IMG/VR virus record: IMGVR_UViG_3300031951_000001
Location: 248,001-312,000 of that record
Direction: 5' to 3' (one strand)
Length of the DNA stretch: 64,000 nt
Shown: positions 27,427-46,156 of the stretch, piece after piece
Layout of the letters: each line of letters starts with the position of its first letter
Numbering within the stretch: position 1 is the stretch's first letter
Notes under the pieces: model-generated
Told to the model about the DNA's origin: nothing
Seen by the model: only the letters and a program-made list of their open reading frames with translations
The model's database searches: none
Position numbers and translations under genes: made by a program

Positions 27427-27642
27427 ATGCCAACTGAAGTTATTATCAACGAATTATCAGGTCAAAGTCCATTTAATATTTATTTATGTGATAACCCAAC
27501 AACATCTTGTGTGTTTATCGATACAATCACCTCGGCACCTTATAGTTTCGCAATTCCTGATATATTCAATGGTCAAGTTTCTTTTAACTTAAAAATAACA
27601 ACAAATGGTGGTTGTGAAACGTTTCAAACATTGAATTTATAA
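27427..27642 (+). CDS. Small 3-Cys beta protein; stand-alone copy of the N-terminal domain of 29981..34426
   Basis: SGQSPFNIYLCD....CV....KITT.GGCE aligns with [13 protein letters not shown]....CV....KIITADGCE. Confidence 0.75.
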   Translation: MPTEVIINELSGQSPFNIYLCDNPTTSCVFIDTITSAPYSFAIPDIFNGQVSFNLKITTNGGCETFQTLNL

Positions 27643-27643
27643 C

Positions 27644-29917
27644 ATGGCAGCACCAACAACACCTTGTGCATATACAACCCTATGCGTCTATGATACAGGA
27701 TTTCCACAATGGGACGACACCTATACTAGGTCAGGAAGTTATAATGGTAACTACTATTATATAGGTAATACAAACGGATATGTAATTTTTTTAAGTGATA
27801 ACGGATGGTGTCTTTCTGATTATATTGATGGACAATGTTTTTTGAGCGGTAAGTCATGTTACAGAACTTGTCCTGATTTTTGTGATGATTATTTTACCAA
27901 CGGAACTTGTCCCCCACCAGAACCCCCACCACCTGTTAACCCTTGTAATATAATTGATTTTGATGCTATATTCAATTGCGATGTACCATCACCCACACCA
28001 CCACCTACACCTCAATGTGGTGATAAAATAACAATTTCTGCGACTTCACCAACTTCAACAATTGAATTTGAACCTGATACTGATATTGTTTATACTAATC
28101 AAGGTACAATATTCCATAGCCCTTTTAATTTTAATGGTACTAGTCCCGGTAATATATATTTGGCGGTTTCTACAACTCAACCGGTGTGGAAAAGAATTGA
28201 TTCTACTGATGGGCCATTAAATAGAACTGGATTGTGGACCAATCAACCTAATGATAGACCTTACGACACTTGGTTAGGATTTACTGTTTGTATAAATGTT
28301 TCTGAAACTAAAACTTATTGGGTTGGATTAGCGGGGGACAATAATTTTAGAATCTCTATTGATGGTCAAACTATTGTAAATACAATAAGCGGACCTTATG
28401 ATGGTGATACATTTGCCTTTATTTTTTGGCATGTATATCCAATAACATTAACTGCAGGAGACCATGTTGTTGAATTATTTGGATTAAATAATGGGGCTTC
28501 CGGTGCGTTTGGTTGCGAAATTTATAACAACACTATTGATGAATTGACCGGAGCAACCCAAGTTTCTGATTTGGATATAATATTCACATCCGCTGGCCAA
28601 ACAGAGGCGACTATAGTGCAGAATTTATCAGGTCAATATCTGGCCAGTGGATATACATGTCCTGTAGGATATACTTTTGACCCCTGTACCATTTCATGTT
28701 TTACAATTATACCTCCATGTTCCCCAACACCAACTCAAACTCCCACCGCAACAGTATTCTGCCCATTATCGGTTAATGCCTCAATTTCGTCTTACACTCC
28801 AACACAAACACCAACACCGACCCAAACTCCTACATTACCTGAAACGATTACCCGAGGATGTGGATTTTTGGGTGACGTTACCTTTAATACTATAAATTCT
28901 GTTATAGACTGTCCGGTAAGTTTAGAATTTCAAGATTGTTACAATGGATTAACATATTACACAACTAATTCACTCTCAAGGCCTGAAGGTGGCACTTTAG
29001 AAAAGTTTATGATTTATCAGGCGAATATTGACGGAATAAGAAAGTGTGTTTCTTTCGTCGGTATAAACCAAAACATTATAGGAAGTAGTAATGTTACTCT
29101 TATCTCTAATTTGATAGGGTATTCTAATTTAGGTGAATGTACTAATTGTTTAGGAATACTTACCCCGACCCCAACACCAACACCATCAATAACCCCAACA
29201 ATTACATTAACTTCGTCATCTAATAAACCAGCACCACCGGCACCATCACAAAGCCCAACCGTTACCCCTTCTAAACAAGTATTATATTATACGTATGAAA
29301 GATGTGGTACTTACACAAGAGTTTGTCAACCAATGCCGGCAATCTCAAATCAATCAATAGGTACTGTATTCAAAGTAGGTAATGCGGGACAATTCGCGAA
29401 TACTTGTTGGGAGCTAGTTAGTGTAACATCTGTTTGTAATACATCTAACCCTAATTATAATACAATCACATATACTACAAACGCATTTTCGATAATCAAT
29501 AATGTTTTATATACCGACTGTAGTAAGTGCTCATCCAATACACAAACGGCCCCACCCCAACCACCACCACCTAGTTTAACGCCTACAAGAACTCCAACAC
29601 CTACTAAAGCACCACAATCGGCACCAATACAAGCGTGTAAACCCCATACGGTTATAGTATCAACAGGACCATGTAATATATGTTACCATCCGGCTGTTTC
29701 TGCGTTATACCCACTACCTGCCAATACGACTATGTATTCTCCGAGCGACTTTTTAATACCTGGTTCTCAGTTGTACATAAACTCAACCTGTACAACACCC
29801 ATACCTCCTTTCCAATACATCAAAGCCCTTTCATCATCAGGAGGTGCAATAACTCCGACTATGATATCTTTTGGTGGAGGAATAATAAGTAATTACTCAT
29901 GTTCGATATGTTATTAG
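27644..29917 (+). CDS. Modular surface protein with a PA14-like domain and T/P linkers
   Basis: TYWVGLAGDNNFRISIDGQ...ITLTAGDHVVELFGLN resembles PA14; Cys-rich modules and TP repeats. Confidence 0.65.
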   Translation: MAAPTTPCAYTTLCVYDTGFPQWDDTYTRSGSYNGNYYYIGNTNGYVIFLSDNGWCLSDYIDGQCFLSGKSCYRTCPDFCDDYFTNGTCPPPEPPPPVNPCNIIDFDAIFNCDVPSPTPPPTPQCGDKITISATSPTSTIEFEPDTDIVYTNQGTIFHSPFNFNGTSPGNIYLAVSTTQPVWKRIDSTDGPLNRTGLWTNQPNDRPYDTWLGFTVCINVSETKTYWVGLAGDNNFRISIDGQTIVNTISGPYDGDTFAFIFWHVYPITLTAGDHVVELFGLNNGASGAFGCEIYNNTIDELTGATQVSDLDIIFTSAGQTEATIVQNLSGQYLASGYTCPVGYTFDPCTISCFTIIPPCSPTPTQTPTATVFCPLSVNASISSYTPTQTPTPTQTPTLPETITRGCGFLGDVTFNTINSVIDCPVSLEFQDCYNGLTYYTTNSLSRPEGGTLEKFMIYQANIDGIRKCVSFVGINQNIIGSSNVTLISNLIGYSNLGECTNCLGILTPTPTPTPSITPTITLTSSSNKPAPPAPSQSPTVTPSKQVLYYTYERCGTYTRVCQPMPAISNQSIGTVFKVGNAGQFANTCWELVSVTSVCNTSNPNYNTITYTTNAFSIINNVLYTDCSKCSSNTQTAPPQPPPPSLTPTRTPTPTKAPQSAPIQACKPHTVIVSTGPCNICYHPAVSALYPLPANTTMYSPSDFLIPGSQLYINSTCTTPIPPFQYIKALSSSGGAITPTMISFGGGIISNYSCSICY

Positions 29918-29950
29918 AACAAATAAACCAACATAAAACGATTAATTAAT

Positions 29951-29958
29951 TATTTATA
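29951..29958 (+). promoter_or_regulatory. Putative late promoter motif TATTTAT
   Basis: TATTTATA upstream of 29981. Confidence 0.5.
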
Positions 29959-29980: not shown

Positions 29981-32900
29981 ATGGATACTATAAGTTTATT
30001 TAACATATCGGGTGTTAATCCTCCATTCATAATATACATATGTGATATTTACGGCGATAATTGTGTCGAAGTTGCTATAGTAAATAACTTTGTTCCCCCG
30101 ATTATTACACTTAATGTCCCTATAGTTTTCCAAGACTCGGCGGCGGTTGGTGTTAAAATAATAACCGCGGACGGATGTGAAAGATTAGAAACTGTTTTAT
30201 GTAGTATTATAACCACCCCAACCCCTACAATATCGATAACACCAACGATTACCCCTACAATCACCCCAACTATTACTGAAACACCTACAATCACCCCAAC
30301 TATTAGTATTACCCCAACTATTACCCCGACGGTTACTGAAACACTCACACAAACTCCAACCAATACACAAACTCCAACAATAACTAATACGGAGACACCA
30401 ACTAATACGGTAACACCAACCTTAACCCCAACACCTACGAATAATGGTTGTTTTTGTTACTTTGTTGATATTACCCAGTTAGATATCAATAGAGCTAGCG
30501 GTAATACTGAAACAACTGCAAATGGTGTTGTTAATTTAGTGTATTATGATTGTTCCGAGGGTATTATAACCTCTGCAATTACTGGAAGTGGAATTTATTA
30601 TATCTGTAACAATCCATCGGAAACTATAGATGGGTTTAGTATTCCGGTACTATTGAATTACAGTCAAAATAATTTTAGTTATAGTAATGTATTCACACCA
30701 TTATCATTCTCTAGTACGTTTTTTACAGATTATTCAACTTGTTCACAAAGCGGGGATTGTGTTTTGCCAAGTAGCACCCCAACACCAACTCCAACCCCTA
30801 CAGTAACTAATAATGGTTGTTTTTGTTATTTTGTTAATATTTCGGCAATTGATTTAGCAAATGCTATAAACAATACCAATCCCTCATTTGATGGTGTTGT
30901 AAATATTCTATACATAGATTGTAAAGGGGTACTACAAAGACTTACTATATCTTCTCCTGGTATAACTGTTATATGTAACAATGTTCAATCTTCTATTAAC
31001 TCATTCGGAATAGATGTTTATATAACATATTCTAATAACGATGAGTCTTATAATAATAGAAATGATATAATCCAAAGTTTTTATACCACTGATAATACCA
31101 ATTGTACTGAGGCTTCTTCATGTGTTCCACCAACCCCTACTTCTACTAAAACACCAACCGCCACCCCAACAGGTACTGCGACGATAACCCCTACAAATAC
31201 ATTAACTCAAACACAAACACCCACTACAACATCAACATCAACGCAAACACCGACCGCAACACCAAGTCCATTCCCATCAAGAACTCCAAGTAATAGCCCA
31301 ACACCCACAGTAACACCAACTGTAACACCATCACTAACTGTTTCAGGTTTCCCAACAGAAACGCCAACCTCGACCCAAACACCTACCGTTACTCCAACAG
31401 TGACCCAAACACCCACTAATACTTTAACATCAACACCAACAGTTACTGAAACCCCGACCAATACTGTCACACAGACTCTGAGTCCAACTAGTACCGTAAC
31501 ATCAACATCAACTCAAACACAAACTCAAACTCCTACAGAAACAGTTACTAATACCCCTACAGTGACTCAAACACAAACTCAAACTGTTACAATCACAGAA
31601 AGCCCAACGAATACCCCCACAATAACTGAAAGCCCAACAAATACCCCAACAATCACATCAACTCCTACTGAAACATCTACTCCGACATCTACCAATACTA
31701 ATACTCCGACCAGTACGAGTACATTAACAGTGACCCCAACAACAACTCAAACTGTCGCATCTACTAATACACCAACACAGACACCTACCGCAACTGTTAC
31801 TGAAACTCAAACACCAACGCCAACTAATACTAACACATCAACACCTACTAATACTAACACATCAACACCTACTAATACTGTAACCGTAACTGAAACTAAA
31901 ACACCAACGCCAACCAAAACACCAATTAATTGTAATTGTATTGAGTTTTTCGCCGCTGCGGGTGGAGCTGTTATATCTTATAATAAATGTGATGGAACTT
32001 CAGTTACTAATTTATTCGTACCTGGAGGGTCTACGGTTAAGGATTGTATTATAAATGAAGAATATACAATAACATCTGGTGTAATAGTAACTAATTTTGG
32101 TTCATGTATCGACAATTCATGTCCTACTCCGACACCAACACCTACCACCACCGAGACCCCAACAAATACGGTAACACCAACTCCGACCACTACTGAAACT
32201 CCGACTAGTACAGAGACCCCAACAAATACCGTTACCCCAACTCCGACTATAACAGTCACTCCAACTAAAACTGAATTTAAACCTCTAAACTTATGGTTTA
32301 GTGGTTGTTGTCAACCAGGACAAATCATTCAATTATATGAAGTTCCTGGTGAAATAGGTCAAACCATAATTGAAGGAGATGTTTATTATATTGAATCACC
32401 ACAGTTCAAGGGATGCGCGACTAATATAGCTCAAACTCTAACGGATTTACAATACTTGTATTTGAATATTACTAATCAATTCACTTGCCAAGATTGTATA
32501 GATTCAAATCCTTGTCCAACATCTACACCTACTCCGACACCAACCGAAACTCCAACTCAAACACCAACTCAAACACCAACTACAACTCAAACGCCAACCG
32601 AAACAAATACCCCAACAGTAACTCAAACACAAACAAGTACAATCACTAGTACTCCAACAAACACGGTTACTAATACTCAAACTCAAACAGTTACACAGAC
32701 AGTGACTGTTACTGAAACGATAACAAGTACTCCTACTCAAACAAATACAACAACTAATACTCCAACTCAAACCAGTACAGTTACCAACACATCGACCCCA
32801 ACATCAACAGAGACATCTACGCCTACGCCAACCAACACTACAACATCTACACCTACAACAACAGAAACACCCACACCTACCCCAACACCAACGACAACAC

Positions 32901-34426
32901 AAACACCAACCATAACCTCAACTTCAACACAAACACCAACAGTCACACCAACTAATACTATTACCGTTACGCCTTCAACAATATTCTGTGTTGACTGTGT
33001 TGAATCAGGTTACACATATGTATTCAGTTGTGCTCCAACACCTTCTATCACTAAAACGCCAAGTGTTACCCCAACGATAACCTACACACCGACAGTCACC
33101 CCAACCAATACAAGTACCCCAACAAAAACACCTACCCCAACTCAAACTAATACTGTAACTGTAACAATAACTAAAACTTCGACACCTACAAACACAACAA
33201 CTGTTACTAACACTACAACACAGACACCAACACCAACTGAAACACCGACCGCAACGGTGACTAGTACACAAACACCAACTGTAACAGTTACTAGTACTTC
33301 TACACAAACACCAACGAATACTCAAACACCTACTACTACACAAACACCAACCCCATCAATTACTGAATATAAGCCATCATTCAGACACTTTAGTGCATGT
33401 TGTTCTCCACATATAGTATTCAGAGTTTATGAGATACCTGGATTGACAGCCACAACCATTGTTGAAGGTAATATTTACTATATTGAGACAGGTGTGTTCA
33501 GTGGTTGTGCAACAAGTATTGCCGAAGTATTTACACCAAATAATTATTTGTTTGTTGGTGTGACGGCCCAAACTGATTGTGATGAATGTACGTTCTCAAA
33601 TCCATGTCCGACACCAACCCCTACGCAAACCCCTACACAAACAGAAACTCCAACACAAACCCCAACACCGACACAAACTCAAACATCTAGCCCTACTAAC
33701 ACCCCAACTTTAACACCTACCCCAACTAAAACTCCGGCGCCAACTTGTGATTTGATTGTTACTTTGGTGAATACCGAATCAATTAGTTCAAATACTGAAA
33801 TTAATATTTGGTATGATGATTCAGGCTCTATGGGGTCTACACGAGCTCCTTTGGAGCAAATGATTGCACCTGGTGGAATACTTGAAACTTGTTTGATAGG
33901 TGTTTATAACAATGATATTACGTTATATAATGAGAGAGTTCAATTCTTCACAATGCAAACTGGCCCATTAGGTAATGTAAATGAAAGATTTGTTGCGTGT
34001 TTAGCAACTTCGAGAAATGCTGGAAGAGCAGTTGATACTAGCGTTGATTTAGTAATCAATTTGGTTTTCCAAGACGAGAGTGGTGGAGCGTATGTTACAG
34101 GTGGAACTTTTACGCCTACAACTGTATTAGACCCGGATTATGGGACTGACGTTACAACTTTGAGAAACCTCTTATCTTCAATTGATTATGGATTAAGAGG
34201 TGTTGTATTTGCGGTAATAAATGAGGGACAACCTACCTTCCAAGACTTGGTACAAACAACTTTTGTAAATGCGGGAATATATTCACCACCTAACAACTTA
34301 AGTGATTATTACTTGACCAATTTAAACTACCAATTAGGTATAAACGATGGAGATACTTCGACTTATTATTATAATTTGATAATCTCCACACTTAATTCTT
34401 TGGGTATCGTAACACCGGGATGTTGA
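29981..34426 (+). CDS. Mucin-like Thr/Pro-rich modular protein with a C-terminal vWA-like domain (1481 aa)
   Basis: Long TPT linkers, repeated Cys modules, and [11 protein letters not shown] (DxSxS MIDAS) at 33815-33829. Confidence 0.75.
32975..33094 (+). repeat. 120-nt dispersed repeat, copy 1 (copy 2 at 34758-34877)
   Basis: 39/40 aa identical; 18 nt differences. Confidence 0.9.
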
Positions 34427-37400: not shown

Positions 37401-40400
37401 ATAAATTTTGAGTACTCATTACAAATTTCAGGTTCTGAAGGTGACACCGTAAGTTTATGTGCGTCATCAAGTTTAGTTTTAGACCCATTTATTGCGGTAT
37501 TCAATAACGGAGTTTGCGAAGGATTTTGTGGCACCTCAACACCAACACCAACACCGACAGAGACTCCCACACCAACCATTACTGACACTCCTACACAAAC
37601 CCCAACAATTACCGAAACAAACACACAAACCCCAACTCAAACTCCAACAAACACTGTTACAGAAACATCCACATCAACACCGACCCCAACTCAAACTGAA
37701 ACACCGACAAATACTGTAACCTCTACTCCAACAAATACAGTAACCTCTACCCCAACGATAACATCTACATCAACTCAAACTCCAACGGTTACATCAACTC
37801 CAACTCCATCAATTACCGAGTACAAGCCAGCTATAAGAACATTTAGTGGATGTTGTTTCCCATTTGAAATTTTTAAACTTTATGAAATACCTGGATTAAC
37901 CGCTAACACAATAACTGAAGGTACAGTTTACTACATTGAATCCGGTGTATTTAGCGGTTGTGCTACAAACATTGCCGAAACATTCACACAAAATAATTAT
38001 CTATTTGTTAATATTAGTGCCCAAACTAGTTGTAGCGGTTGTTCGGCATCCTACCCATGCCCGAGCTCAACCCCGACACCTACTGTAACATCAACACCAA
38101 CAGTTACTCCAACGATTACCTCGACTCCAACGATTACCTCGACCCCAACTCAAACTGAAACCCCAACTCAAACTGAAACCCCAACTCAGACACAAACTTC
38201 AACAGTAACATCAACACCTACAGAAAGCCCAACTTCGACACAAACTCAAACTCAGACACAAACTCAAACTGTAACACCAACAAAAACGTCAACCCCAACA
38301 AGAACACCTATTGAGTGTGTTTGTTATTCTATAACCAATATAGGTGAATTTTTTGGTAGTTATAACGGAATTTTATGTAATGGTGGACCTTCAGGAGGAA
38401 TACCAATAGGTCCTGGTGTAACATTTACCGCATGTTATGCTAAAGGGTCACTTCAAACTGTGGGAGGTACTTTAACATTTCTTGAGAATGGGTCTTGTGA
38501 GAACTCAATACTTTGTCCTACTAGAACTCCGACTCCTACAAGAACTGGTACCCCGACCCCGACTCCTACAACTACTGAAACACCTACAAATACCGTAACG
38601 CCAACTACGACAACTACTGAAACACCGACTAGTACATCAACACAAACACCAAGTGTAACCAACACTATAACATCAACACCTACTCAAACATTGTGTTGTA
38701 CCTCATGGACACTATATGGAGGTTTAGGTCAATTACTCGATAATGGATTTGTTATTAAACCTCCTTTGAGGGTAGGGGATGATTTTGCATTGATACCTAC
38801 AAATGTAGGCTCACCTGGTACTTTAGTTGGTCAAGTTTTGGAACTAATCAGTGTTAGCCCTCCACTATCGCCCCAATATTTTACAATTTTAACTGCTACG
38901 TTTAACCCTATAAATTCGGCCTACTTATTAACATTTACCCCTACTTTAACAATTAATTTGGGTAGTACCTTCCAGAGTATAATTTATAACATTTATCAGT
39001 CAGGAGGTACACAATTCAATGTTTACAATTGTGGAGGGTCTCTTACGACTTTGAATTTGAATAACAATGAAATATTGGTCATTCCTTGTTCCTATGATGT
39101 TCAGGTTATATCAGGATTCGGGTATGCTGAGTCTGACCCATCATGTGTATGTGTCACTCAAACTCCAACACCAACATTGACACCTACTGTGACATCAACA
39201 ATAACTCAAACCCCAACAAATACAGTAACCGTTACTCAATATACTTGTAATTGTTATTTTATAAATGTGCCAGACATTAGAGATGGAGTAAATTTAGTAT
39301 TTTTAGATTGTTTGGGTAGTTTGATTTCAATAGCACCAAATAATTTTGGAAATTATTGTGTTAGAGAAATAATTGATTATGGTTCAGGTACCGCCGAACT
39401 TGTAGGACTATGTATAGATGGAAATTGTCCAACACCAACGCCAACTCCAACTCAAACCGAAACCCCAACCCCAACTGAAACTCCAACCCAAACAATTACC
39501 CAAACTCCAACTGTTACTCAGACCTCGACACCAACTGTTACTCAGACCTCGACACCAACTGTTACTATCACGGAATCGGCTACACAAACTCAAACACCAA
39601 CACCGACTGAAACTCCAACTAATACTTTAACACCGACTGTGACAATTACTGAATCTGTTACGCCAACAAGGACATTAACACCAACCAAAACTCAGGCACC
39701 ATGTTTATCTAGCTGTGATGTGTTGTTATTAGACAATGTCGGTAGAGTTTATATATACAATTCAGTCACTAACTCTCCACTGTACTTAGGTATTGATGGT
39801 CCTGATGGTTCCTTCGATATTGCACATACAAATAACAAAATATGGTTAAATAGAGGAACTTCATTATATGAATATGATATAATATTATGTCCGTTCTCGG
39901 CGACATTCAGCAGAGAAATTTCAGGTTCAACGGCATTTAGTGCTGGATTATTTGCAATAAATGACACTACTTTAATTGCTAATAATGGAGCGACCCCTTC
40001 TTCAATTTTAGAGATTGATGTTTCGACTAATCCTTACACAGTTACAACAAAATTCTCTTTATTACCAGGAAGAAGAGTTTCAGGTGATTATGTTCTAACA
40101 AATTCAGGTAAGTTAATTGTTAGTAATTTTTCGGGAACAAACCCAAATGCACCCACTGGTGTTTACATAACACAATATAACTATATAACTTCGGCAACAC
40201 CCCCTGTAGATAACAATGTTGATATATTAATATCCCCAACAATTGTATTCCCATATGGGTTATATCAATATGGAGGTGGTTTCTATATTCTGAGTGCGAA
40301 TGGTACACAATATACTTTAGACCTAAATCCTCCGTACACACTTACCGCGGCACCTACAGTTCCTTTACCTCCAAATACAATCAACGCCGCATATTTTGGT

Positions 40401-43400
40401 GCATCCCAATCCAACGGATGTTTCGACAATAACATAGTACCTGTGTCACCAACACCAACCTCAACTCCAACCCCGACCCCTACCCCAACTGCAACAATAA
40501 CACAAACCCCAACTATAACACAGACTTCAACACCTACACCAACAATAACTTCTACAGTAACACAGACTCCAACCCAAACTCAAACACCAACTTCAACAAT
40601 TACTGTTACACCAACTCAAACAAGTACGGTTACATCAACCCCAACTGTTACATCAACCCCGACACCAACCATAACTGAATACAAGCCGGCAATTAGAACG
40701 TTTAGTGGATGTTGTTTCCCATTTGAAACCTTTAAGATTTTCGAAATACCTGGATTAACCGCAAATTCAATAACTGAAGGCACGGTTTATTACATTGAGT
40801 CCGTAGGATTTAGTGGATGTGCGACAAACATTGCAGAGACATTCACTCAAAACAATTACCTATTTGTTAACTTGAGTGCTCAAACAAGTTGTAGTGGTTG
40901 CTCGACAAATTACCCATGTCCAAGCTCAACACCAACACCTACAGTTACATCGACTCCTACATTAACGCCAACGCAAACCCAAACACCAACGCAAACCCAA
41001 ACACCAACTGAGACATCCACTCAAACACCAACTGAGACATCCACTCAAACACCAACCCAAACTCAAACTTCAACACAAACACCGACTAATACACAAACAT
41101 CAACCAACACCCCTACCACAACAGTAACACCAACTTTGACACGTACTCCTGATACTTGTAATTGCTACACATTCTTTAACATATCAACTTCACAAAGTTT
41201 GACTGTAGATTTTATTGATTGTACAGGCTTACAAAACCAAATTACAATAAATTACGGAAATAGTGCTCAAGTTTGTGTTAAAAATAATATTTTCTCGGGT
41301 ACCCCATCAGGGGCTTTAGTATCATTCTTAAATGGTGATTGTACAAATGGATGTCCGACAACTACCATACAAGCTTGTAACCCATTTGTAGTGAATGGAA
41401 CAAATAGAATTATTTATACTTATGACCCAATAACTAACACACAAATTCCATTACCTATTAATACCGAATCTGTTTCTATATACGATATTGCAACAAATGA
41501 TAACTATTTATGGATATATGGTAATTTCGCAACATTAGGAAATGGTATAAAAGAATATTTTATAACAACATCCCCATTTACATCAAGTTTAAATAGATTT
41601 ATATCGGGTTCTACACTATATCAATCCACAAGAAATGGTTTAGCGGTTTTAAATAACACCACATTAATAACGGCTTCAGGTACGGCTGGTAATGTGATAG
41701 TGAGTTTAAATATTTCATCAAATACTTGGGTTGCAACTCCGTTATTTACTTTACCAACAAATAGAGTCCTAAGGGGTGATTTAACTTATACAAACACAGG
41801 TAATATTATTGCGTTAACTTATAATAATGTTGCGGGTACCGGGTCTTTTTTAACACAGTTTGATTTATTTGGTAATCAGGAATTAGAATTCCAAATAGGT
41901 AATTCTGTTGAAGGATTTGGTTTGTTCATGTATAATTCACAAATATTTACGGTTGCCTCTTCATCGGCGTCTCCCGCTGTAGTTAGAAGAGATTTGAACT
42001 TCCCCTATACATCTTTAACAGTAAACAATATGACAATAACAAATGTTGGGTTTGCCCAACCGTTAAGTTGTTTAAATGTTAATTTCATAGGAGTTACCCG
42101 AACACCAACACAAACCCCAACACCTACCCCAACACCTACTACCACTAAAACTAATACGCCTACATCAACGCAAACCCAAACCCAAACTCCAACTAGAACC
42201 TCAACCCCAACAAACACCCAAACTCCTACTATTACAAGTACCTCCACAATTACTCCTACCGTTACAAGAACCGCCACAATTACTCCTACCGTTACAAGAA
42301 CATCAACGATTACTCCTACCGTTACAAGAACATCAACAATTACTCCAACAATAACACAAACGGCAACCCAAACGAATACCCCAACAGTAACACAAACGGC
42401 AACTGTTACACAAACTGCAACTCAAACTCCTACACCTACCGAAACTTCTAATCTGTTTGCTTGTACTTGTTATAATTTCTTCAACACATCAAATAACCAA
42501 CCCGGAACAGTTACTTATTATAATTGTGATGGGGTATTTAGTTCTGTAACGGTTAGTGCCACTTCATATGTTCAATTATGTGTTTCAGGTAATTCAACAA
42601 ATCCATTATACACCGCAACGACCCAAATTACTGCTATAGATGAGTTAGGTGATTGTACAGTAAGTTGCCCAACAATTAATTTGGATAGTTGTATTTCCTT
42701 TTTAGCTGGGGGGCCGGGTAACATCATTCAATCATATGATTTTCAAACTAATACCACAACTTTTTTACCCATACCAAATAGACCATGGTCAATGCTTGGA
42801 ATTGCAAATACTTCAAATAAACTTTGGGTTCACGGTACTTATCTTGGTTTCACCAGTGGAGGTATAAGAGAATGGGATATAACATTTTCACCGTTTAGTG
42901 CAACATATAATGGCAGAACTATAAACATACAAAGTAATACTATATTACCTAATAGTAATGCATGTGGTTTAGTTGCAATCGATAATTTTAATTTATTAAG
43001 TGTGTCAGGTGCTACTGCAGGGTCCCAAAGTGTGGTTAATGTTGATATTTCAGATACCATAACCAATAACGCGGTATTTACGAAACTTTTTGATTTACCA
43101 AGTAATAGAAGAATATTAACTGATTTAGTTTTTACTCAAACTGGTAAGATTATAATAATGACCCAAACAACTACCCCTGTCAAAATATTTATTACTCAAT
43201 ATGATATACTTGGAAACATTGAGGTTGATGTTCCATTATTCACATCAGGAATAGATGCAAATAGTGGATGGTCTATTTTGATTAATTCTAATAATTTGTA
43301 TATTGTAAGAGCTACTACTCCTGGAGAAATTTATCAGGTAAACTTAACTTCACCATATTCGGCAACCTTACTTTCTGAAAGTTTACCAGTTACTGTGACG

Positions 43401-45788
43401 GACCAATCCCAATCACCAGAGTGTATCACAGTTGAGTTTATACCTGTTACAAAAACACCGACTCCAACACCTACTAAAACTCCAACACCTACCGTGACTA
43501 TGACGATAACGCCAACTTCAGGTGCAACAGAAACACGGACTCCGACGCCGACTACCACTCAAACTTCAACACCAACAATAACATCTACGATTACTCCGAC
43601 AATAACGGCAACACCAACAAGAACGGCGACTCAAACACCAACAATAACAAGAACGGCGACTCAAACACCAACAATAACAAGAACGGCGACTCAAACACCG
43701 ACAATAACAAGAACGGCGACTCAAACACCGACAAGAACTGCGACACCAACAAGAACACCAACTAGAACGGCAACAAATACTCCATCGATTACCCCAACCA
43801 TAAGTATAACTCCAACAATAACCTCAAATTTACCATGTAAATGTTTTAATTTTTACAATACAAGTGATACGGTAAATGGTACTCTTATATACACTGCTTG
43901 TAATTTAACAGTTAGTTCTACAACGGTATCGGCTAATTCATTTGTACAATTGTGTGTAAATTTAAGCGGATATAGTGGGTCATCACAAATAACATTTGTT
44001 AACCAAGTTGGTTCATGTGTAAATGGTTTTTGTCCTAACATATCTATAAATTCTTGTGATTTGTTATCGGTTAAAAAAGAACCTTCTGGTCCGACTAATG
44101 GTCTTTGGCAGATTATGAGTATTAGAAACGAAAGTCTTTTGTATTTGCCGGTTTCTGGTAGAACTGTAGGAACCAACGCTTTAGCGAGAACGTCTAATAA
44201 AGTTTGGGTACTAGGATTTTTTACGGCATTAGGTGGTTCTAGAATAAGGGAATACTCAATTACCCAAAATCCTTGGTCTGCGGTGGTGACTAATAACTAT
44301 ACATTACCGACAAATTTGCCGTCTGTTATCGACAATGGTATGGCGGCAATCGATGATGAGAATTTTATTGTTGGGTCCGGAACTGCATTGAATGTTATTG
44401 CAAAATTAAATGTTTCAGGTGGAATTTTATCATCTACTAAAATTATAGATTTAATATCACCATTTACGGTTTTTGGTGACATGATTTATACTACAACCAA
44501 TAAAGTCATAGTTGCGGTTAAAAATACAATTAATACTAACATATGGCAAATTCACCAATATGATGTTAATGGGACTTTTGAACTGGCGGTAGACGTTTCA
44601 TCTATATCTTTATTTAATTCCGGAATAAATTTCGCGGTAGTTAATAACCAATTATATTTATTACCACATAATCAAACATATAATAATTATTATTTAATTA
44701 ATTTAAATAATCCTTACAATACCACAATTCAGTCGGCTCTTGGAGGTAGTGCCCCAAATGACGTTGCTCAAAATCCTGAATGTATTAATATTCAGTTTAT
44801 CCCTTCTACACAGACACCAACACCAACAAGAACAAAAACTCCGACACCAACAAGAACTCCAACAAGAAGTGCAACACCAACAAGAACTCCAACAAGAAGT
44901 GCAACACCAACAAGAACTCCAACAAGAAGTGCAACACCAACAAGAACTCCAACAAGAAGTGCAACACCAACAAGAACACCAACAATAACCATGAGTCCGT
45001 CGATTACACCAAGTCGAACAGTAACAATGACACCTTCATCTATTGGTATCTATACTCAACCATTGATGGTAAGTTTTTCTGGAACATCTACTGTAATATC
45101 AAGATACGATGTAACAACAAATACTATTACAACTTTAGATGTACAAAGTTCCGGTATTTTACCAAATCAAGATATTGCATGTACTCAAAATAAATTTTGG
45201 TTATCAAATCAGGGGTCTGGTAACATAATAAAAGAATATACTTATACCGCGTCACCTTTCAATTATGTGTTGAATAGAACTTTGAATATACCAGTTACAT
45301 TGACTGATGGATTAACTGTAAGGACTGTGGGAGGTATTGAATATTTGATTGGATGTACAGGTAATACAACTATTGTTGAAATGGATATATCATCAACAAC
45401 GGCCATAGTTACCGATAAATTTGATTTACCTCTTAACAGAACCATAGGTGCTGATATGATGTATACTAATACTGGAAAATTAATAGTTGCCAACTATTCA
45501 GGTGGTAATACAACAGTCGGATTTATGACGCAGTATAACTATGAAACAAATACTTTAGAGATTGATAGGGCATTACCAACTACTTATGCTGCTGGCGGTC
45601 AAAAAGTTTATTTTGTATCTAATAATAATATCTATAGTACTAGTATCTCTGCTAGTCTTTCGGTTGTTTATCAATGGAATACAGATAGTAATATTAACAA
45701 TCCACTTCCATTACAATCCTTCGAGTTACCACTACTTCGTGGAAGCGCTCAACCACAAGAATTCATAAACATTAATTTCACCTCATAA
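34440..45788 (+). CDS. Giant mucin-like modular surface/fibre protein (3782 aa)
   Basis: Uninterrupted ORF; seven ~235-aa repeated modules, multiple 6-Cys and CC modules, T/P linkers. Confidence 0.8.
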   Translation: MPTALIQSVNYAGQYGDITFNPQTGGTVSVGVQLLPFNYVADYVYGVYVVCFSAFSVCCEFNLLAPTPTPTATITKTPTITPTETVTPTKTPTPTITPTMTMTPTPSTIFCVDCVESGYTYVFSCAPTPSITRTPSVTPTITYTPTQTSTKTPTQTPTTTQTPTITKTSTQTPTITKTSTPTRTLTPTGTNPPSVPECAVIFNSLQNVFFYDVDTDTTTQLIVPDTVGSATNDIAHTSSKLWMASASEIYEWDITLSPFTAVFNRVITLPSGIGPGLGAINNTTLIAVQSGGNPKQVVSVNITTNTAVFTTLFPMLINRGVAGDIILTTTNKVIITTNATAAPFGQFITQYNFLNGDPEVDIQLNPTITQPWGIFQDNGEIYIMDGNETNNVFHIDKNYPYTITLTGDTGYSVYGASQLPNCLDVNFIPQITPTPTQTPTQTPTTTQTPTVTVTETITNTPTNTPTPTKTPVSCDCFEITAVGNNAVIDYFKCGSEGVSVRKLIEPARPFKVCLENSGVTTLSGVTQISNFGPCIDGECASPTPTPTVTQTPTNTLTPTITPTNTLTPTITPTETQTPTITSTSTQTPTSTQTITPTLTQSPTPTVTLTNTVTPTITETPTSTATQTPTTTTTQTPTSTETPTTTQTPTSTQTPTTTQTPTTTQTPTNTMTVTPTPVCIDGCSVLYVDSESLIYSYDYNTETSTVIFDPKATVRDIANTSSRLFITIVNRIQRYSFSTCPVSVTLIDEITRLFLGDGLFAINDTTLIITSTQAIGQENVQELNYITNTVTPKFSLPTGYSVRGDFILTTGGKFIVSMFQGLSNYILQYDYSTGEQEVLFQVSQIIAGFFEFGGNIYAVDTSGIVYQAILDSPWGLVSTTLDPLTFTGVIKGTSQELSCLPTNFNIVTPTPTPTQTPTPTVTVTETPTMTVTETPTQTETPTQTPTNTETPTQTSTPTPTPTLDCFCYTFVNTSLLDKQNVSGKDCNNINFEYSLQISGSEGDTVSLCASSSLVLDPFIAVFNNGVCEGFCGTSTPTPTPTETPTPTITDTPTQTPTITETNTQTPTQTPTNTVTETSTSTPTPTQTETPTNTVTSTPTNTVTSTPTITSTSTQTPTVTSTPTPSITEYKPAIRTFSGCCFPFEIFKLYEIPGLTANTITEGTVYYIESGVFSGCATNIAETFTQNNYLFVNISAQTSCSGCSASYPCPSSTPTPTVTSTPTVTPTITSTPTITSTPTQTETPTQTETPTQTQTSTVTSTPTESPTSTQTQTQTQTQTVTPTKTSTPTRTPIECVCYSITNIGEFFGSYNGILCNGGPSGGIPIGPGVTFTACYAKGSLQTVGGTLTFLENGSCENSILCPTRTPTPTRTGTPTPTPTTTETPTNTVTPTTTTTETPTSTSTQTPSVTNTITSTPTQTLCCTSWTLYGGLGQLLDNGFVIKPPLRVGDDFALIPTNVGSPGTLVGQVLELISVSPPLSPQYFTILTATFNPINSAYLLTFTPTLTINLGSTFQSIIYNIYQSGGTQFNVYNCGGSLTTLNLNNNEILVIPCSYDVQVISGFGYAESDPSCVCVTQTPTPTLTPTVTSTITQTPTNTVTVTQYTCNCYFINVPDIRDGVNLVFLDCLGSLISIAPNNFGNYCVREIIDYGSGTAELVGLCIDGNCPTPTPTPTQTETPTPTETPTQTITQTPTVTQTSTPTVTQTSTPTVTITESATQTQTPTPTETPTNTLTPTVTITESVTPTRTLTPTKTQAPCLSSCDVLLLDNVGRVYIYNSVTNSPLYLGIDGPDGSFDIAHTNNKIWLNRGTSLYEYDIILCPFSATFSREISGSTAFSAGLFAINDTTLIANNGATPSSILEIDVSTNPYTVTTKFSLLPGRRVSGDYVLTNSGKLIVSNFSGTNPNAPTGVYITQYNYITSATPPVDNNVDILISPTIVFPYGLYQYGGGFYILSANGTQYTLDLNPPYTLTAAPTVPLPPNTINAAYFGASQSNGCFDNNIVPVSPTPTSTPTPTPTPTATITQTPTITQTSTPTPTITSTVTQTPTQTQTPTSTITVTPTQTSTVTSTPTVTSTPTPTITEYKPAIRTFSGCCFPFETFKIFEIPGLTANSITEGTVYYIESVGFSGCATNIAETFTQNNYLFVNLSAQTSCSGCSTNYPCPSSTPTPTVTSTPTLTPTQTQTPTQTQTPTETSTQTPTETSTQTPTQTQTSTQTPTNTQTSTNTPTTTVTPTLTRTPDTCNCYTFFNISTSQSLTVDFIDCTGLQNQITINYGNSAQVCVKNNIFSGTPSGALVSFLNGDCTNGCPTTTIQACNPFVVNGTNRIIYTYDPITNTQIPLPINTESVSIYDIATNDNYLWIYGNFATLGNGIKEYFITTSPFTSSLNRFISGSTLYQSTRNGLAVLNNTTLITASGTAGNVIVSLNISSNTWVATPLFTLPTNRVLRGDLTYTNTGNIIALTYNNVAGTGSFLTQFDLFGNQELEFQIGNSVEGFGLFMYNSQIFTVASSSASPAVVRRDLNFPYTSLTVNNMTITNVGFAQPLSCLNVNFIGVTRTPTQTPTPTPTPTTTKTNTPTSTQTQTQTPTRTSTPTNTQTPTITSTSTITPTVTRTATITPTVTRTSTITPTVTRTSTITPTITQTATQTNTPTVTQTATVTQTATQTPTPTETSNLFACTCYNFFNTSNNQPGTVTYYNCDGVFSSVTVSATSYVQLCVSGNSTNPLYTATTQITAIDELGDCTVSCPTINLDSCISFLAGGPGNIIQSYDFQTNTTTFLPIPNRPWSMLGIANTSNKLWVHGTYLGFTSGGIREWDITFSPFSATYNGRTINIQSNTILPNSNACGLVAIDNFNLLSVSGATAGSQSVVNVDISDTITNNAVFTKLFDLPSNRRILTDLVFTQTGKIIIMTQTTTPVKIFITQYDILGNIEVDVPLFTSGIDANSGWSILINSNNLYIVRATTPGEIYQVNLTSPYSATLLSESLPVTVTDQSQSPECITVEFIPVTKTPTPTPTKTPTPTVTMTITPTSGATETRTPTPTTTQTSTPTITSTITPTITATPTRTATQTPTITRTATQTPTITRTATQTPTITRTATQTPTRTATPTRTPTRTATNTPSITPTISITPTITSNLPCKCFNFYNTSDTVNGTLIYTACNLTVSSTTVSANSFVQLCVNLSGYSGSSQITFVNQVGSCVNGFCPNISINSCDLLSVKKEPSGPTNGLWQIMSIRNESLLYLPVSGRTVGTNALARTSNKVWVLGFFTALGGSRIREYSITQNPWSAVVTNNYTLPTNLPSVIDNGMAAIDDENFIVGSGTALNVIAKLNVSGGILSSTKIIDLISPFTVFGDMIYTTTNKVIVAVKNTINTNIWQIHQYDVNGTFELAVDVSSISLFNSGINFAVVNNQLYLLPHNQTYNNYYLINLNNPYNTTIQSALGGSAPNDVAQNPECINIQFIPSTQTPTPTRTKTPTPTRTPTRSATPTRTPTRSATPTRTPTRSATPTRTPTRSATPTRTPTITMSPSITPSRTVTMTPSSIGIYTQPLMVSFSGTSTVISRYDVTTNTITTLDVQSSGILPNQDIACTQNKFWLSNQGSGNIIKEYTYTASPFNYVLNRTLNIPVTLTDGLTVRTVGGIEYLIGCTGNTTIVEMDISSTTAIVTDKFDLPLNRTIGADMMYTNTGKLIVANYSGGNTTVGFMTQYNYETNTLEIDRALPTTYAAGGQKVYFVSNNNIYSTSISASLSVVYQWNTDSNINNPLPLQSFELPLLRGSAQPQEFININFTS
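34758..34877 (+). repeat. 120-nt dispersed repeat, copy 2
   Basis: [26 protein letters not shown](K/R)[13 protein letters not shown]. Confidence 0.9.
37810..38070 (+). repeat. ~260-nt dispersed repeat (CC module), paired with ~40670-40930
   Basis: Both encode EYKPAIRTFSGCCFPFE...CPSSTP, with mostly third-position differences. Confidence 0.85.
42241..42346 (+). repeat. 30-nt tandem repeat x~3.5 (coding)
   Basis: Core ATTACTCCTACCGTTACAAGAA is identical in three units. Confidence 0.85.
43621..43733 (+). repeat. 30-nt tandem repeat x~3.8 (coding)
   Basis: GAACGGCGACTCAAACACC(A/G)ACAATAACAA. Confidence 0.9.
44851..44977 (+). repeat. Exact 30-nt tandem repeat x4 (coding)
   Basis: CAAGAACTCCAACAAGAAGTGCAACACCAA x4 plus a partial copy; encodes a 10-aa TRTPTRSATP unit. 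Confidence 0.95.
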
Positions 45789-45802
45789 ACCAAACCTAAA
45801 AC

Positions 45803-45810
45803 TATTTATA
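45803..45810 (+). promoter_or_regulatory. Putative late promoter motif TATTTAT
   Basis: TATTTATA upstream of 45827. Confidence 0.5.
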
Positions 45811-45826
45811 AATAAAATAAATCACA

Positions 45827-46156
45827 ATGTCATTTTCAGCATTAACATGTATGACTGTAACCGGAGCTTCTTTATCTCCGAACGCAACTATTCAGATTTT
45901 TTCTGATTATGATAATTTTTCAGTACCGTTTGATTCGGTTCCTCTGTCAGCAATAACAGGAAACCAATGTCCTTTTACTCTTACAGGAATACCGGATTTT
46001 ACGACAGTGATTTTATTAAGAGACCCGGCAACTGCTTGTTGTTTATACGTAACAATTATTTGTTGTGACTATAAACAATTCCAGCATGGACTATGTTTTG
46101 AATTTCAAGATTATCAACCATACTATTTCCAAGACCAATTCCAAGGTGGAGGATAA
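45827..46156 (+). CDS. Small Cys-containing putative virion protein
   Basis: 109-aa ORF with an upstream TATTTAT motif; aromatic/Gln tail KQFQHGLCFEFQDYQPYYFQ. Confidence 0.6.
   Translation: MSFSALTCMTVTGASLSPNATIQIFSDYDNFSVPFDSVPLSAITGNQCPFTLTGIPDFTTVILLRDPATACCLYVTIICCDYKQFQHGLCFEFQDYQPYYFQDQFQGGG

What the first reader, a model, noticed from the sequence alone, without database searches (positions are those of the whole stretch)
27427..46156. Combinatorial array of giant mucin-like, Cys-rich surface proteins
Seen in the sequence: about 19 kb of adjacent genes (71, 757, 1481, 3782 and 109 aa) are built from a small shared kit. The kit has a ~70-aa N-terminal domain, 6-Cys mini-domains, CC modules, ~235-aa propeller-like modules and terminal ligand-binding-like domains (PA14, vWA), strung on hundreds of Thr/Pro residues. 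The same modules recur in 15626..19114 and 19145..21619. TATTTAT motifs precede 27427, 29981 and 45827, as for the baseplate genes. Inference: long flexible beads-on-a-string virion appendages (head or tail fibres) for multivalent binding to Bacteroidota surface glycans or biofilm matrix, diversified by module shuffling. I cannot match this architecture to a characterised phage fibre type.
Basis: partly seen in the sequence, partly recalled or inferred. Interest (0 to 1): 0.78.

Follow-up and report, generated by a model that had tools for sequence, protein, structure and literature searches.

The report
Giant mucin-like modular phage fibre genes
An uncultured 322-kb freshwater phage carries a hypervariable block of genes for very long beads-on-a-string proteins (five-bladed propellers and small cysteine-rich domains joined by Thr/Pro spacers), and its genome also encodes a mucin-type protein glycosyltransferase, so these are probably sugar-coated adhesive virion fibres of a kind not yet described for phages.

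Summary
Window 27427-46156 encodes intact ORFs of 71, 757, 1481, 3782 and 109 aa. They are built from a shared kit: a ~70-aa N-terminal domain, 6-Cys mini-domains, 'CC' modules and seven ~240-aa modules. Thr/Pro spacers join the modules and make up 47% of the 1481-aa protein and 29% of the 3782-aa protein.

In 79 of 80 related contigs the locus opens with the same two genes and is then hypervariable. A promoter-like TATTTATA motif is shared with head and baseplate operons, and tail-fibre-type paralogues flank the block.

New here: the genome holds two more such clusters and a glycosylation island. The island includes a GT60 polypeptide GlcNAc-transferase (Pfam E 1e-70), present in 5 of 5 relatives tested.

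Best reading (about 0.55): long, flexible, probably O-glycosylated virion adhesin fibres. Virion location, glycosylation, host, and the PA14 and vWA labels remain unproven.

The parts
27402..27408 (+). TATTTAT promoter-like motif 25 nt upstream of g71
   Evidence: genome-wide strand-specific enrichment upstream of starts
27427..27642 (+). g71: stand-alone A domain (~70 aa, 3 Cys). It is the first gene of the locus in 79 of 80 related contigs.
   Evidence: the Atlas places it in viral clusters with an fn3/Ig-like predicted fold (lead only)
27644..29917 (+). g757: conserved N-terminal H domain (aa 1-121), PA14-like F (122-361), and 6-Cys domains I (398-508), J (547-637) and K (654-757), joined by short T/P spacers. 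H-I is conserved in relatives; the other modules are swapped.
   Evidence: PA14 leads
29951..29958 (+). TATTTATA motif 30 nt upstream of g1481
29981..34426 (+). g1481. Module order: A (aa 1-74), CFCY x2 (154-262, 277-383), CxC (648-716), CC (763-847), 3-Cys mini (~1002-1017), CC (1127-1211), and a C-terminal vWA-like domain (1253-1481) with a DDSGS motif. 47% of the protein is T/P spacer.
34440..45788 (+). g3782: 19 globular modules on 17 T/P spacers (1106 residues). The modules are a divergent A-like N-terminus, one 3-Cys mini, seven CxC, two CC, one 163-aa CC-type module, and seven D propellers.
35019..35726 (+). D propeller 1 of g3782. The others lie at 36468-37151, 39699-40439, 41364-42089, 42675-43445, 44040-44804 and 45042-45782.
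   Evidence: HMM E 1e-77 to 5e-93; alignment A1
41145..42092 (+). CxC module plus D propeller 4: the unit that was modelled. It forms a small six-strand beta domain followed by a five-bladed beta-propeller.
   Evidence: AlphaFold2 pLDDT 94.4, pTM 0.92; fold searches
44844..44985 (+). Near-perfect 30-nt x 4.7 tandem array in a T/P spacer. A 60-nt in-frame length difference occurs here in a 99.9%-identical contig from another sample.
45803..45810 (+). TATTTATA motif 24 nt upstream of g109
45827..46156 (+). g109: 7-Cys small protein. Its first ~70 aa match the N-terminus of 726-749-aa proteins in relatives.
46175..47227 (+). g350: member of a family whose relatives are often fused to the tail-fibre intramolecular chaperone domain (Peptidase_S74).
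47240..48361 (+). g373: paralogue of g350 (34% identity)
15626..19114 (+). g1162 in the baseplate-side gene row: SprB repeats plus one D propeller (aa 722-969, window 17789-18532)
   Evidence: syntenic homologue P0024

Best explanation
Window 27427-48361 is a fibre/adhesin gene block of an uncultured T4-type jumbo phage of lakes.

Proposed mechanism.
- Each long protein starts with a small conserved N-terminal domain: A in g71 and g1481, H-I in g757. This domain is inferred to dock the protein to the particle or to a hub protein.
- A single chain then carries many small disulfide-type beta domains and five-bladed beta-propellers.
- Extended Thr/Pro spacers separate these modules.
- The spacers are inferred to be O-glycosylated in the cytoplasm. 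The inferred enzymes are the phage's own GT60 polypeptide GlcNAc-transferase and the neighbouring transferase and methyltransferase genes. This would give stiff bottle-brush, mucin-like stalks.
- At about 0.3 nm per residue, the 3782-aa protein would reach roughly 300-400 nm.
- The propellers, and perhaps the PA14-like and vWA-like end domains, are inferred to be the binding units. They would give multivalent, reversible attachment to surface polysaccharide of the host or of particles.
- Module swapping and spacer-length changes retune specificity and reach.

Shown: the gene structure, the module kit, the propeller fold (predicted), the hypervariability of the locus, the promoter-like motif shared with structural operons, and the presence and conservation of the GT60 gene.

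Inferred: virion incorporation, glycosylation of the spacers, glycan binding, and the position on the particle. I rate tail/baseplate slightly more likely than head.
For: 1. Phage context. The record is a 322,372-bp virus, CheckV 100% complete, with a T4 gp23-type capsid protein, a gp6-type baseplate wedge and a large terminase.

2. The genes are real. The ORFs are intact, and contigs from other samples are 99.9-100% identical over the globular parts.

3. The D module is a real family. It has 838 clusters at E<=1e-3 and 226 at E<=1e-30. The hits carry the same A/B/C/D kit in many orders.

4. D is predicted as a five-bladed propeller: pLDDT 94.4, 20 strands.
- The phi11 propeller is the proposed GlcNAc-binding platform (PMC4901313).
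- Cellular structural neighbours are propellers in surface proteins.

5. Conserved anchor plus variable payload. 79 of 80 primase-anchored relatives start the locus with the small A protein and an H/I protein. There are then 16 architectures among 57 distinct proteins, and the downstream genes vary. A is always N-terminal.

6. Shared promoter-like motif. TATTTATA precedes the giant genes, the terminase gene, the capsid-module genes and the baseplate-region genes. It does not precede the primase or SbcCD genes.

7. Neighbours are fibre-like.
- g1162 and g824 carry SprB repeats.
- The g350/g373 family includes members fused to the Peptidase_S74 tail-fibre chaperone, to collagen repeats or to a beta-helix.

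8. No signal peptides or membrane segments are visible at the N-termini (read directly). The proteins therefore leave the cell only by lysis, as virion proteins do.

9. Glycosylation machinery.
- PF11397 (GT60) scores 239 bits, has a DSH motif and has no signal peptide.
- It sits with a 1067-aa protein with weak GT25/GT2 matches and a TylF methyltransferase-HtrL protein, directly upstream of a 3705-aa sister giant gene.
- PF11397 is present in 5 of 5 related virus records and in 0 of 14 control cellular genomes.
- In a distant relative, a D-D protein is immediately followed by PF11397, a methyltransferase and HtrL.
- GT60 enzymes make GlcNAc-alpha-O-Thr on Thr-rich mucin-like proteins of Trypanosoma cruzi (PMC9472816).

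10. Spacer arrays change length in frame between near-identical strains.

11. Precedent. Jumbo phages of Bacteroidota (PTm1, PTm5) bear 50-100-nm flexible head fibres, and 'hairy' myoviruses exist.
Against: - There is no proteomic, imaging or expression evidence. No RNA run was listed as holding the sequence.
- No coiled-coil or trimerisation element typical of phage fibres was seen.
- The docking test (H domain with g71) gave no answer.
- The GT60 gene lies ~90 kb from this cluster, and its substrate is unknown. Its homologues in Xanthomonas and Stenotrophomonas jumbo phages sit in genomes where the one neighbouring giant ORF examined has only short T/P stretches.
- Many cysteines in proteins made in a reducing cytoplasm need an explanation. 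No Erv1-type oxidase was found, though that search was uninformative.
- The PA14-like domain was not modelled with confidence, and the vWA-like domain was not modelled at all.
Confidence: 0.55

Rival explanations
1. The proteins are virion-borne, but the main role of the Thr/Pro stalks is a glycan coat rather than adhesion. The coat would give colloidal stability, shielding from grazers, enzymes or non-productive adsorption, or a larger hydrodynamic size. The globular modules would be mainly structural beads.
For: Spacers make up 29-47% of the two largest proteins. A dedicated glycosylation island is conserved in relatives. Mycobacteriophage virion glycosylation is reported to affect immune recognition rather than adsorption (Freeman et al. 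2023, cited in PMC10877033).
Against: A passive coat does not explain seven diverged but conserved propellers, a family of 838 clusters, or module swapping at a hypervariable locus. These point to selection on binding specificity.
Confidence: 0.15
2. The proteins are not part of the particle. They are released at lysis, or act inside the cell. Once released they could bind host debris, capsule or biofilm matrix, for example as decoy blockers that keep progeny from sticking to lysed cells, or as matrix modifiers.
For: There is no direct virion evidence and no recognisable fibre trimerisation motif. The block is separated from the baseplate genes by replication and repair genes on the other strand. 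The docking prediction gave no answer.
Against: The promoter-like motif is shared with capsid, terminase and baseplate operons. An N-terminal domain is conserved across relatives in the manner of fibre anchors. One D propeller sits in a SprB-repeat protein within the baseplate-side gene row. The flanking genes are tail-fibre-type paralogues.
Confidence: 0.15
3. They are classical trimeric tail fibres or branched receptor-binding complexes at the baseplate. The T/P stretches would be plain unglycosylated linkers, as in bacterial cellulases. The GT60 island would serve another substrate, such as another virion protein or a host target.
For: The g350 family is linked to Peptidase_S74-bearing fibres. 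The propeller resembles a baseplate receptor-binding protein. The GT60 gene is not adjacent to this cluster.
Against: No helices or coiled coils are predicted in the modelled parts. Spacers of up to ~240 residues are far longer than ordinary inter-domain linkers. GT60 sits directly beside the sister giant genes, and beside a D-D gene in a distant relative.
Confidence: 0.12
4. The finding is an artefact: low-complexity DNA that happens to stay open, or misassembled repeats.
For: Short-read unitigs break at the T/P arrays. Strong compositional skew is expected from ACN/CCN codons.
Against: The 11.3-kb frame is open. The globular modules are conserved at 25-89% identity within the genome and across 838 database clusters. 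The module folds with pLDDT 94. Long contigs from independent samples agree.
Confidence: 0.01

Closest known systems
Receptor-binding proteins of Staphylococcus phages phi11 (Gp45, PDB 5efv) and 80alpha (6v8i)
   Different: Sequence identity is 6-7% and no sequence-level relation was found. The phi11 protein is a trimer with a coiled-coil stem, one propeller per chain and a tower domain. Here up to seven propellers sit on one chain, separated by Thr/Pro spacers and 6-Cys domains. Kelch and YWTD propellers score almost as well.
Head-fibre-like appendages of Tenacibaculum jumbo phages PTm1/PTm5 and 'hairy' myoviruses (Erwinia phage Y3)
   Same: These are large myoviruses, some of Bacteroidota, that carry flexible 50-100-nm filaments on the head or tail. 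This is the morphology predicted here.
   Different: The genes for those appendages are not known to me. tblastn of g757, g1481 and the D module found nothing in any of 50,697 GenBank phage records.
T4 Hoc and other Ig-like decoration proteins (mucus-adherence model)
   Same: Both are monomeric strings of small beta domains projecting from a T4-type particle and proposed to bind glycans weakly and multivalently.
   Different: Hoc has four domains, no spacers and a C-terminal capsid anchor. Here the conserved domain is N-terminal, the proteins are 10-30 times longer, the binding module is a propeller, and the spacers are mucin-like. The only 'Hoc-like' PHROG hit is to an Ig-type repeat of g1162.
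Mucins and mucin-like glycoproteins (e.g. T. cruzi mucins made by GT60 GlcNAc-transferases)
   Same: Both have long Thr/Pro-rich tandem arrays flanked by Cys-rich domains. A GT60-family transferase is encoded in the same genome.
   Different: There is no signal peptide or secretory pathway, and synthesis would be cytoplasmic in a bacterium. Glycosylation has not been shown.
Glycosylated mycobacteriophage virions (Freeman et al. 2023)
   Same: Phage-encoded glycosyltransferases modify virion proteins.
   Different: There the capsid and tail-tube subunits are modified, according to the citing review. The transferase family differs from GT60 as far as I know, and no giant modular fibres are involved.

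Membership tests
phi11/80alpha-type phage receptor-binding protein | Five-bladed beta-propeller platform domain | tested here: met
phi11/80alpha-type phage receptor-binding protein | N-terminal triple coiled-coil stem, homotrimer and C-terminal tower | tested here: not met
   No helices are predicted in the modelled unit or in the confident parts of g757. The propellers are flanked by Thr/Pro spacers and 6-Cys domains.
phi11/80alpha-type phage receptor-binding protein | Detectable sequence homology | tested here: not met
   The D-module profile against PDB sequences gave no hit better than E 0.65. Identity in the structural alignment is 6-7%.
Kelch / YWTD six-bladed propellers | Pfam repeat match above threshold; six blades | tested here: not met
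   Kelch_6 scores E 0.26 and 11.8 bits against a cut-off of 25.3. The module has about 240 aa and 20 strands, which gives five blades.
PA14 domain (PF07691), g757 aa 122-361 | Pfam model above the gathering score | tested here: not met
   The score is 13.7 bits against a cut-off of 24, E 0.056. Two of 7 homologues reach E<=0.01, best 8e-4. Database homologues carry no PA14 annotation.
PA14 domain (PF07691), g757 aa 122-361 | PA14 beta-barrel fold | tested here: inconclusive
   This stretch was modelled at pLDDT ~30. The top Atlas feature cluster has PA14 in 13% of members at score 0.87, which is a lead only.
von Willebrand A domain, g1481 aa 1253-1481 | Pfam or PDB profile match | tested here: not met
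   There is no Pfam hit at E<=10, no PDB hit with a single sequence or with the 8-sequence profile, and homologues carry no Pfam annotation.
von Willebrand A domain, g1481 aa 1253-1481 | MIDAS DxSxS motif after the first strand | tested here: met
   DDSGS in the window protein. D[DN]SGS is kept in all six aligned sequences that cover the region.
von Willebrand A domain, g1481 aa 1253-1481 | Alpha/beta Rossmann-type fold | not tested
Language-model neighbours are all vWA-type families at 0.83-0.89, which is a lead only.
Mucin-like glycoprotein | Long Pro/Thr/Ser-rich tandem-repeat regions | tested here: met
   There are 700 and 1106 spacer residues in g1481 and g3782. TRF reports 52 rows, with periods that are multiples of 6 nt.
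Mucin-like glycoprotein | Dense O-glycosylation of the repeats | not testable with these tools
   Only genomic association is available: a GT60 gene and further transferase and methyltransferase genes in the genome and in relatives.
Mucin-like glycoprotein | Secretory signal peptide | tested here: not met
   The N-termini read have no hydrophobic signal-like segment (by eye, no predictor run).
GT60 polypeptide GlcNAc-transferase (Pfam PF11397), genome 181.1-182.4 kb, outside the window | Pfam model above the cut-off, plus a metal-binding DxH/DxD motif | tested here: met
   The score is 239 bits against a cut-off of 21, E 1e-70. A 'QIDSH' motif is present. The PF11397 to GT60 equivalence is from my knowledge of CAZy and Pfam.
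GT60 polypeptide GlcNAc-transferase (Pfam PF11397), genome 181.1-182.4 kb, outside the window | Transfers GlcNAc to Thr (or Hyp) of the Thr/Pro spacers | not testable with these tools
No prolyl hydroxylase (PF13640) was found in the genome.
T4 Hoc-type head decoration | Tandem Ig-like domains with a C-terminal capsid-binding domain | tested here: not met
   g71 to g109 have no Ig-family Pfam hit. The conserved domain is N-terminal. The only Hoc-like PHROG hit is in g1162.
Phage tail fibre with Peptidase_S74 intramolecular chaperone (g350/g373) | C-terminal PF13884 domain | tested here: not met
   g350 and g373 have no Pfam hit. Several homologues at E 1e-36 to 1e-38 carry PF13884, so they are related to the fibre body but not members by this feature.

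The most novel reading that the evidence does not exclude
This phage lineage makes true 'phage mucins'. A virus-encoded cytoplasmic mucin-type O-glycosylation pathway would decorate hundreds of Thr residues in giant modular proteins. The pathway would comprise a GT60 initiating transferase plus extension and O-methylation enzymes. The result would be bottle-brush virion filaments several hundred nanometres long, each carrying arrays of a previously unnamed five-bladed lectin-like propeller. This would be a new class of phage adhesion organelle, and the first bacterial-virus counterpart of the self-glycosylated fibrils of giant eukaryotic viruses.
Probability: 0.35. Interest if true: 0.85.

Novelty: new variant of a known kind. 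Interest (0 to 1): 0.7.

Why it matters
- **Adsorption reach.** If these are virion fibres, they would extend the reach of a phage particle several-fold beyond its tail. That bears on how large phages find hosts in dilute lake water.
- **Host-range locus.** The locus is a natural hypervariable cassette in a widespread freshwater phage family. At least 143-183 related contigs were found, and the phage itself recurs in lake metagenomes from 2017 to 2024.
- **A new binding-domain family.** The D propeller has 838 clusters, no Pfam model and no named member. It is a sizeable unexplored family of candidate glycan-binding domains.
- **A testable glycosylation hypothesis.** A conserved GT60 polypeptide GlcNAc-transferase co-occurs with Thr/Pro-rich giant proteins. 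This makes virus-directed mucin-type glycosylation inside a bacterium directly testable. Such glycosylation would be unusual for bacterial viruses.

Tried and rejected
**Searches that found nothing**
- Pfam on whole proteins and on ten cut-out modules gave nothing above threshold.
- PDB sequence searches with the D profile, the vWA-like domain (single sequence and profile), the PA14-like profile and the GT60 protein gave nothing significant.
- megablast of the window's first 12 kb, and tblastn of the D module, g757, g1481 and g350, found no match in GenBank phages.
- Sigma-70 promoter and intrinsic terminator scans across the block were at chance level.

**Jobs that failed or gave no usable answer**
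- Complex prediction of the g757 H domain with g71, testing a docking-hub idea, returned 'no answer' with score 0.02. This is not evidence either way.

**Negative or uninformative checks**
- No prolyl hydroxylase (PF13640) was found. The Erv1 oxidase search rang nowhere, including the controls, so it is uninformative.
- No RNA run was listed as holding the sequence.
- Read laying on four DNA runs confirmed identity of the globular parts. The unitigs break at the repeats, so they gave no independent indel evidence.

**Ideas rejected**
- Signal-peptide-dependent surface display: there are no signal peptides.
- Artefact or low-complexity ORF: the modules are conserved and fold confidently.


Full report
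**1. What is there**

- 27427-27642 (71 aa)
- 27644-29917 (757 aa)
- 29981-34426 (1481 aa)
- 34440-45788 (3782 aa)
- 45827-46156 (109 aa)

Thr and Pro make up 39% of the 1481-aa protein and 32% of the 3782-aa protein. I defined a spacer by a simple rule: a run of at least 12 residues that lacks C, F, W, Y, H, L, M, D and G and is at least half T, P or S. By that rule spacers take 700 residues (47%) of g1481, 1106 (29%) of g3782 and 114 (15%) of g757. The DNA of the spacers consists of many short arrays with periods that are multiples of 6 nt (52 TRF rows). This explains the strong negative GC skew of the region.

**2. The module kit**

All-against-all BLASTP and profile HMMs built from the pieces confirm a shared kit.

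| Module | Description | Where it occurs |
|---|---|---|
| A | ~70-aa N-terminal domain | all of g71; start of g1481; only a divergent form (29% identity) at the start of g3782 |
| B | ~70 aa, six Cys, begins CxC | g1481 once, g3782 seven times |
| b | ~105 aa, begins CFCY | g1481 twice |
| C | 85 aa, with CC, six Cys | twice in each of g1481 and g3782; 46-89% identical |
| D | ~240 aa | g3782 seven times; 25-38% identical |
| 3-Cys mini | with flanks | identical in g1481 and g3782 |

- g757 has its own set of modules: H, F, I, J and K.
- One D module also sits in g1162 (15626-19114, aa 722-969, E 4e-74).
- The neighbouring 19145-21619 gene does not carry kit modules. What it shares with g1162 are SprB repeats (PF13573, above cut-off in both).

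**3. Genome context**

- The window is bases 248001-312000 of a single 322,372-bp virus record that CheckV rates complete.
- It is a distant T4-type myovirus. It has a gp23-type capsid protein (PF07068), a gp6-type baseplate wedge at window 520-2358, and a large terminase.
- The nearest named terminase relatives are an uncultured huge phage (28.6%) and Flavobacterium phage immuto (27%).
- The same phage, near-identical, is in at least 20 lake or freshwater sequencing runs from 2017-2024.
- At least 143 IMG/VR contigs share the neighbouring 1001-aa protein, and 183 share the primase.
- The host is unknown. The SprB repeats and the Flavobacterium-phage terminase are only hints of Bacteroidota.

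**4. The D module**

- A profile of 12 copies found 838 representative clusters at E<=1e-3 among 1.84 billion proteins, 226 of them at E<=1e-30.
- Those looked up are unnamed or 'hypothetical', and the nine scanned have no Pfam domain in the D region.
- In the best 150 hits the same A, B, C and D modules and Thr/Pro spacers recur in many different orders.
- No cultured phage in GenBank has the module at tblastn sensitivity.

With a 120-sequence alignment, AlphaFold2 modelled one CxC+D unit (window 41145-42092) at pLDDT 94.4 and pTM 0.92. The model shows a small six-strand beta domain followed by 20 strands in five four-stranded sheets, that is, a five-bladed propeller.

- Foldseek finds propellers in general: kelch and YWTD at E about 1e-7.
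- Zymomonas glutaminyl cyclase and olfactomedin, both five-bladed, also rank high. Six-bladed kelch domains are only ~0.4 Z behind.
- In phi11 this propeller is the proposed GlcNAc-binding platform (PMC4901313).
- Among cellular models the nearest are DUF4394-, DUF6923- and DUF7927-type propellers in surface proteins.
- Among viral models the nearest are two uncharacterised proteins of Virus NIOZ-UU157.

The fold is therefore established as far as a prediction can establish it. A binding role is an inference.

**5. The end domains**

*PA14-like (g757 aa 122-361).*
- The Pfam PA14 match is below threshold (E 0.056).
- Two of seven homologues reach E<=0.01.
- The top language-model cluster has some PA14 members.
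- The stretch was not modelled with confidence (pLDDT ~30).

*vWA-like (g1481 aa 1253-1481).*
- There is no Pfam or PDB match, even with a family profile.
- A DxSxS motif (DDSGS) is conserved in the family.
- All the best language-model neighbours are vWA families at 0.83-0.89.

Both labels remain plausible leads.

**6. Comparison of the locus across relatives**

- I examined 80 contigs anchored on the divergently transcribed primase (65-100% identity). In 79 of them the locus opens with a small A-only protein like g71, followed by a protein with the H and I domains of g757.
- After that the content varies. There are 16 architectures among 57 distinct H/I proteins, with D, F, B, J and K added at either end.
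- The downstream genes range from none to Thr/Pro-rich giants with up to 86% spacer.
- 26 of 80 contigs have such an ORF within 10 kb.
- A is always N-terminal wherever it occurs.
- Contigs of the same phage from other samples are 99.9-100% identical. They differ by in-frame 60-nt steps inside spacer arrays, one of them at the near-perfect 30-nt array at 44844-44985. One contig lacks 79 nt in the first domain of g3782.

A conserved N-terminal part with a variable distal part is the design of phage fibres and receptor-binding proteins.

**7. Regulation**

- TATTTAT is not over-represented in the window (29 copies against 39 expected).
- Genome-wide, however, 49 of 98 TATTTATA copies lie 8-60 nt upstream of a same-strand start. 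For the reverse complement the figure is 13 of 98.
- The motif precedes g71 (7-mer only), g1481, g109 and the sister giant genes. It also precedes the terminase gene, several genes of the capsid module and baseplate-region genes. It does not precede the primase, exonuclease or SbcCD genes.
- This fits a structural or late promoter class, but timing has not been measured. No RNA run was listed as holding the sequence.

**8.

- *(a)* g350 and g373 (46175-48361) are paralogues. A third copy at genome 167.8 kb also follows a Thr/Pro-rich gene. Their family has more than 177 relatives. Several are fused to the Peptidase_S74 tail-fibre chaperone, one to collagen repeats and one to a beta-helix.
- *(b)* The genome has two more clusters of the same kind, at about 162-178 kb and 189-208 kb. 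They include proteins of 3705, 1413, 958, 1169 and 758 aa with B, D and F modules and spacers.
- *(c)* Directly upstream of the 3705-aa gene lies a glycosylation island:
  - three Gly_rich_2 proteins;
  - a 415-aa PF11397 protein (239 bits, E 1e-70, a DSH motif, no signal peptide);
  - a 1067-aa protein with weak GT25 and GT2 matches;
  - a TylF O-methyltransferase fused to HtrL_YibB.
- PF11397 is present in 5 of 5 related virus records tested and in none of 14 control cellular genomes.
- In a more distant relative, a D-D protein is immediately followed by PF11397, a methyltransferase and HtrL.
- PF11397 corresponds, to my knowledge, to CAZy family GT60. Its characterised members add GlcNAc to Thr of Thr-rich mucin-like proteins in Trypanosoma cruzi (PMC9472816), or to hydroxyproline of Skp1 in the cytoplasm.
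- Only four GenBank phages have a homologue, all jumbo phages of Xanthomonas or Stenotrophomonas.

**9. Interpretation**

The best-supported reading is that the block encodes very long, flexible, modular virion adhesins:
- an N-terminal docking domain;
- beads of disulfide-type domains and propellers;
- Thr/Pro stalks that are probably O-glycosylated by the phage's own enzymes.

I put this at about 0.55. Its components differ in strength:
- fibre or adhesin nature: fairly likely;
- glycosylation: about even;
- place on the particle: open.

The rivals are listed in the Rival explanations section:
- a mainly protective glycan coat;
- non-virion proteins released at lysis;
- ordinary unglycosylated tail fibres;
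- an artefact.

Morphological precedents exist in the hair-like appendages of PTm1/PTm5 and other 'hairy' myoviruses. Those phages share no detectable sequence with this kit.

**10. Novelty**

Phage fibres and decoration proteins are a known kind. This architecture is not described in anything I could find:
- a single chain with up to 19 globular modules on mucin-like spacers;
- an unnamed propeller family;
- a conserved GT60 system in the same genomes.

I rate it a new variant of a known kind.

Noticed in passing
genome 178.4-189.3 kb (locus L194; outside the window): Glycosylation island directly upstream of a 3705-aa sister giant gene. It holds three Gly_rich_2 (PF21722) paralogues, a GT60-type PF11397 GlcNAc-transferase, a 1067-aa protein with weak GT25/GT2 matches, and a TylF methyltransferase-HtrL_YibB fusion. 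PF11397 is conserved in 5 of 5 related virus records.
   Followed up: yes
genome 161972-177834 and 189388-207729 (loci L195, L001): Two further clusters of Thr/Pro-spacer, Cys-module proteins (1169, 758, 310, 2276, 3705, 1413 and 958 aa), several with B, D, F or A modules. Together with the window's block, these genes take roughly an eighth of the genome.
   Followed up: partly
window 46175-48361: g350 and g373 are paralogues, with a third copy at genome 167810-169090 that also follows a Thr/Pro-rich gene. Their family includes members fused to the Peptidase_S74 tail-fibre chaperone, to collagen repeats or to a beta-helix.
   Followed up: partly
window 34522-34600 versus L102 (IMGVR_UViG_3300008114_000012): A 99.9%-identical contig from another sample lacks 79 nt inside the first domain of g3782. 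This would shift the frame, and the ORF there restarts downstream. It could be real strain variation or an assembly error.
   Followed up: no
window 42389-42698, run X13: A minor-depth contig (4.1 against 19.1) carries 28 substitutions over 310 nt across one CxC module. This suggests a co-existing variant or recombinant of this module in one lake sample.
   Followed up: no
whole genome; in the window at 43, 2409, 11680, 21634, 29951, 45803, 58405: TATTTATA is the reverse complement of the T4 late-promoter octamer TATAAATA. It is strongly and strand-specifically placed 8-60 nt upstream of gene starts (49 of 98 against 13 of 98), mostly before structural genes. It is a candidate late promoter of this phage family.
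   Followed up: partly
window 15626-21619: g1162 and g824, next to the baseplate genes, carry SprB repeats (PF13573). To my knowledge this repeat is typical of Bacteroidota gliding adhesins, so it is a weak hint about the host.
   Followed up: partly
L197 (Xanthomonas phage XacN1, AP018399.1 203370-223508): A 48%-identical GT60 homologue sits in a cluster with a carbamoyltransferase and a GT9 gene, next to a 3313-aa ORF. The C-terminus of that ORF has short TPTPTP linkers between small Cys-containing repeats. This may be a simpler parallel in a cultured jumbo phage.
   Followed up: partly
window 24655-25221 (- strand): A 188-aa protein with transglycosylase, endolysin and 'lytic tail protein' PHROG hits lies among replication and repair genes (RuvC-like, exonuclease, primase). 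These genes separate the baseplate row from the fibre block.
   Followed up: no
genome 124249-127321: Two genes just downstream of the gp23-type capsid gene (769 and 227 aa) also contain short Thr/Pro spacers. They are possible head-associated members of the same design.
   Followed up: no
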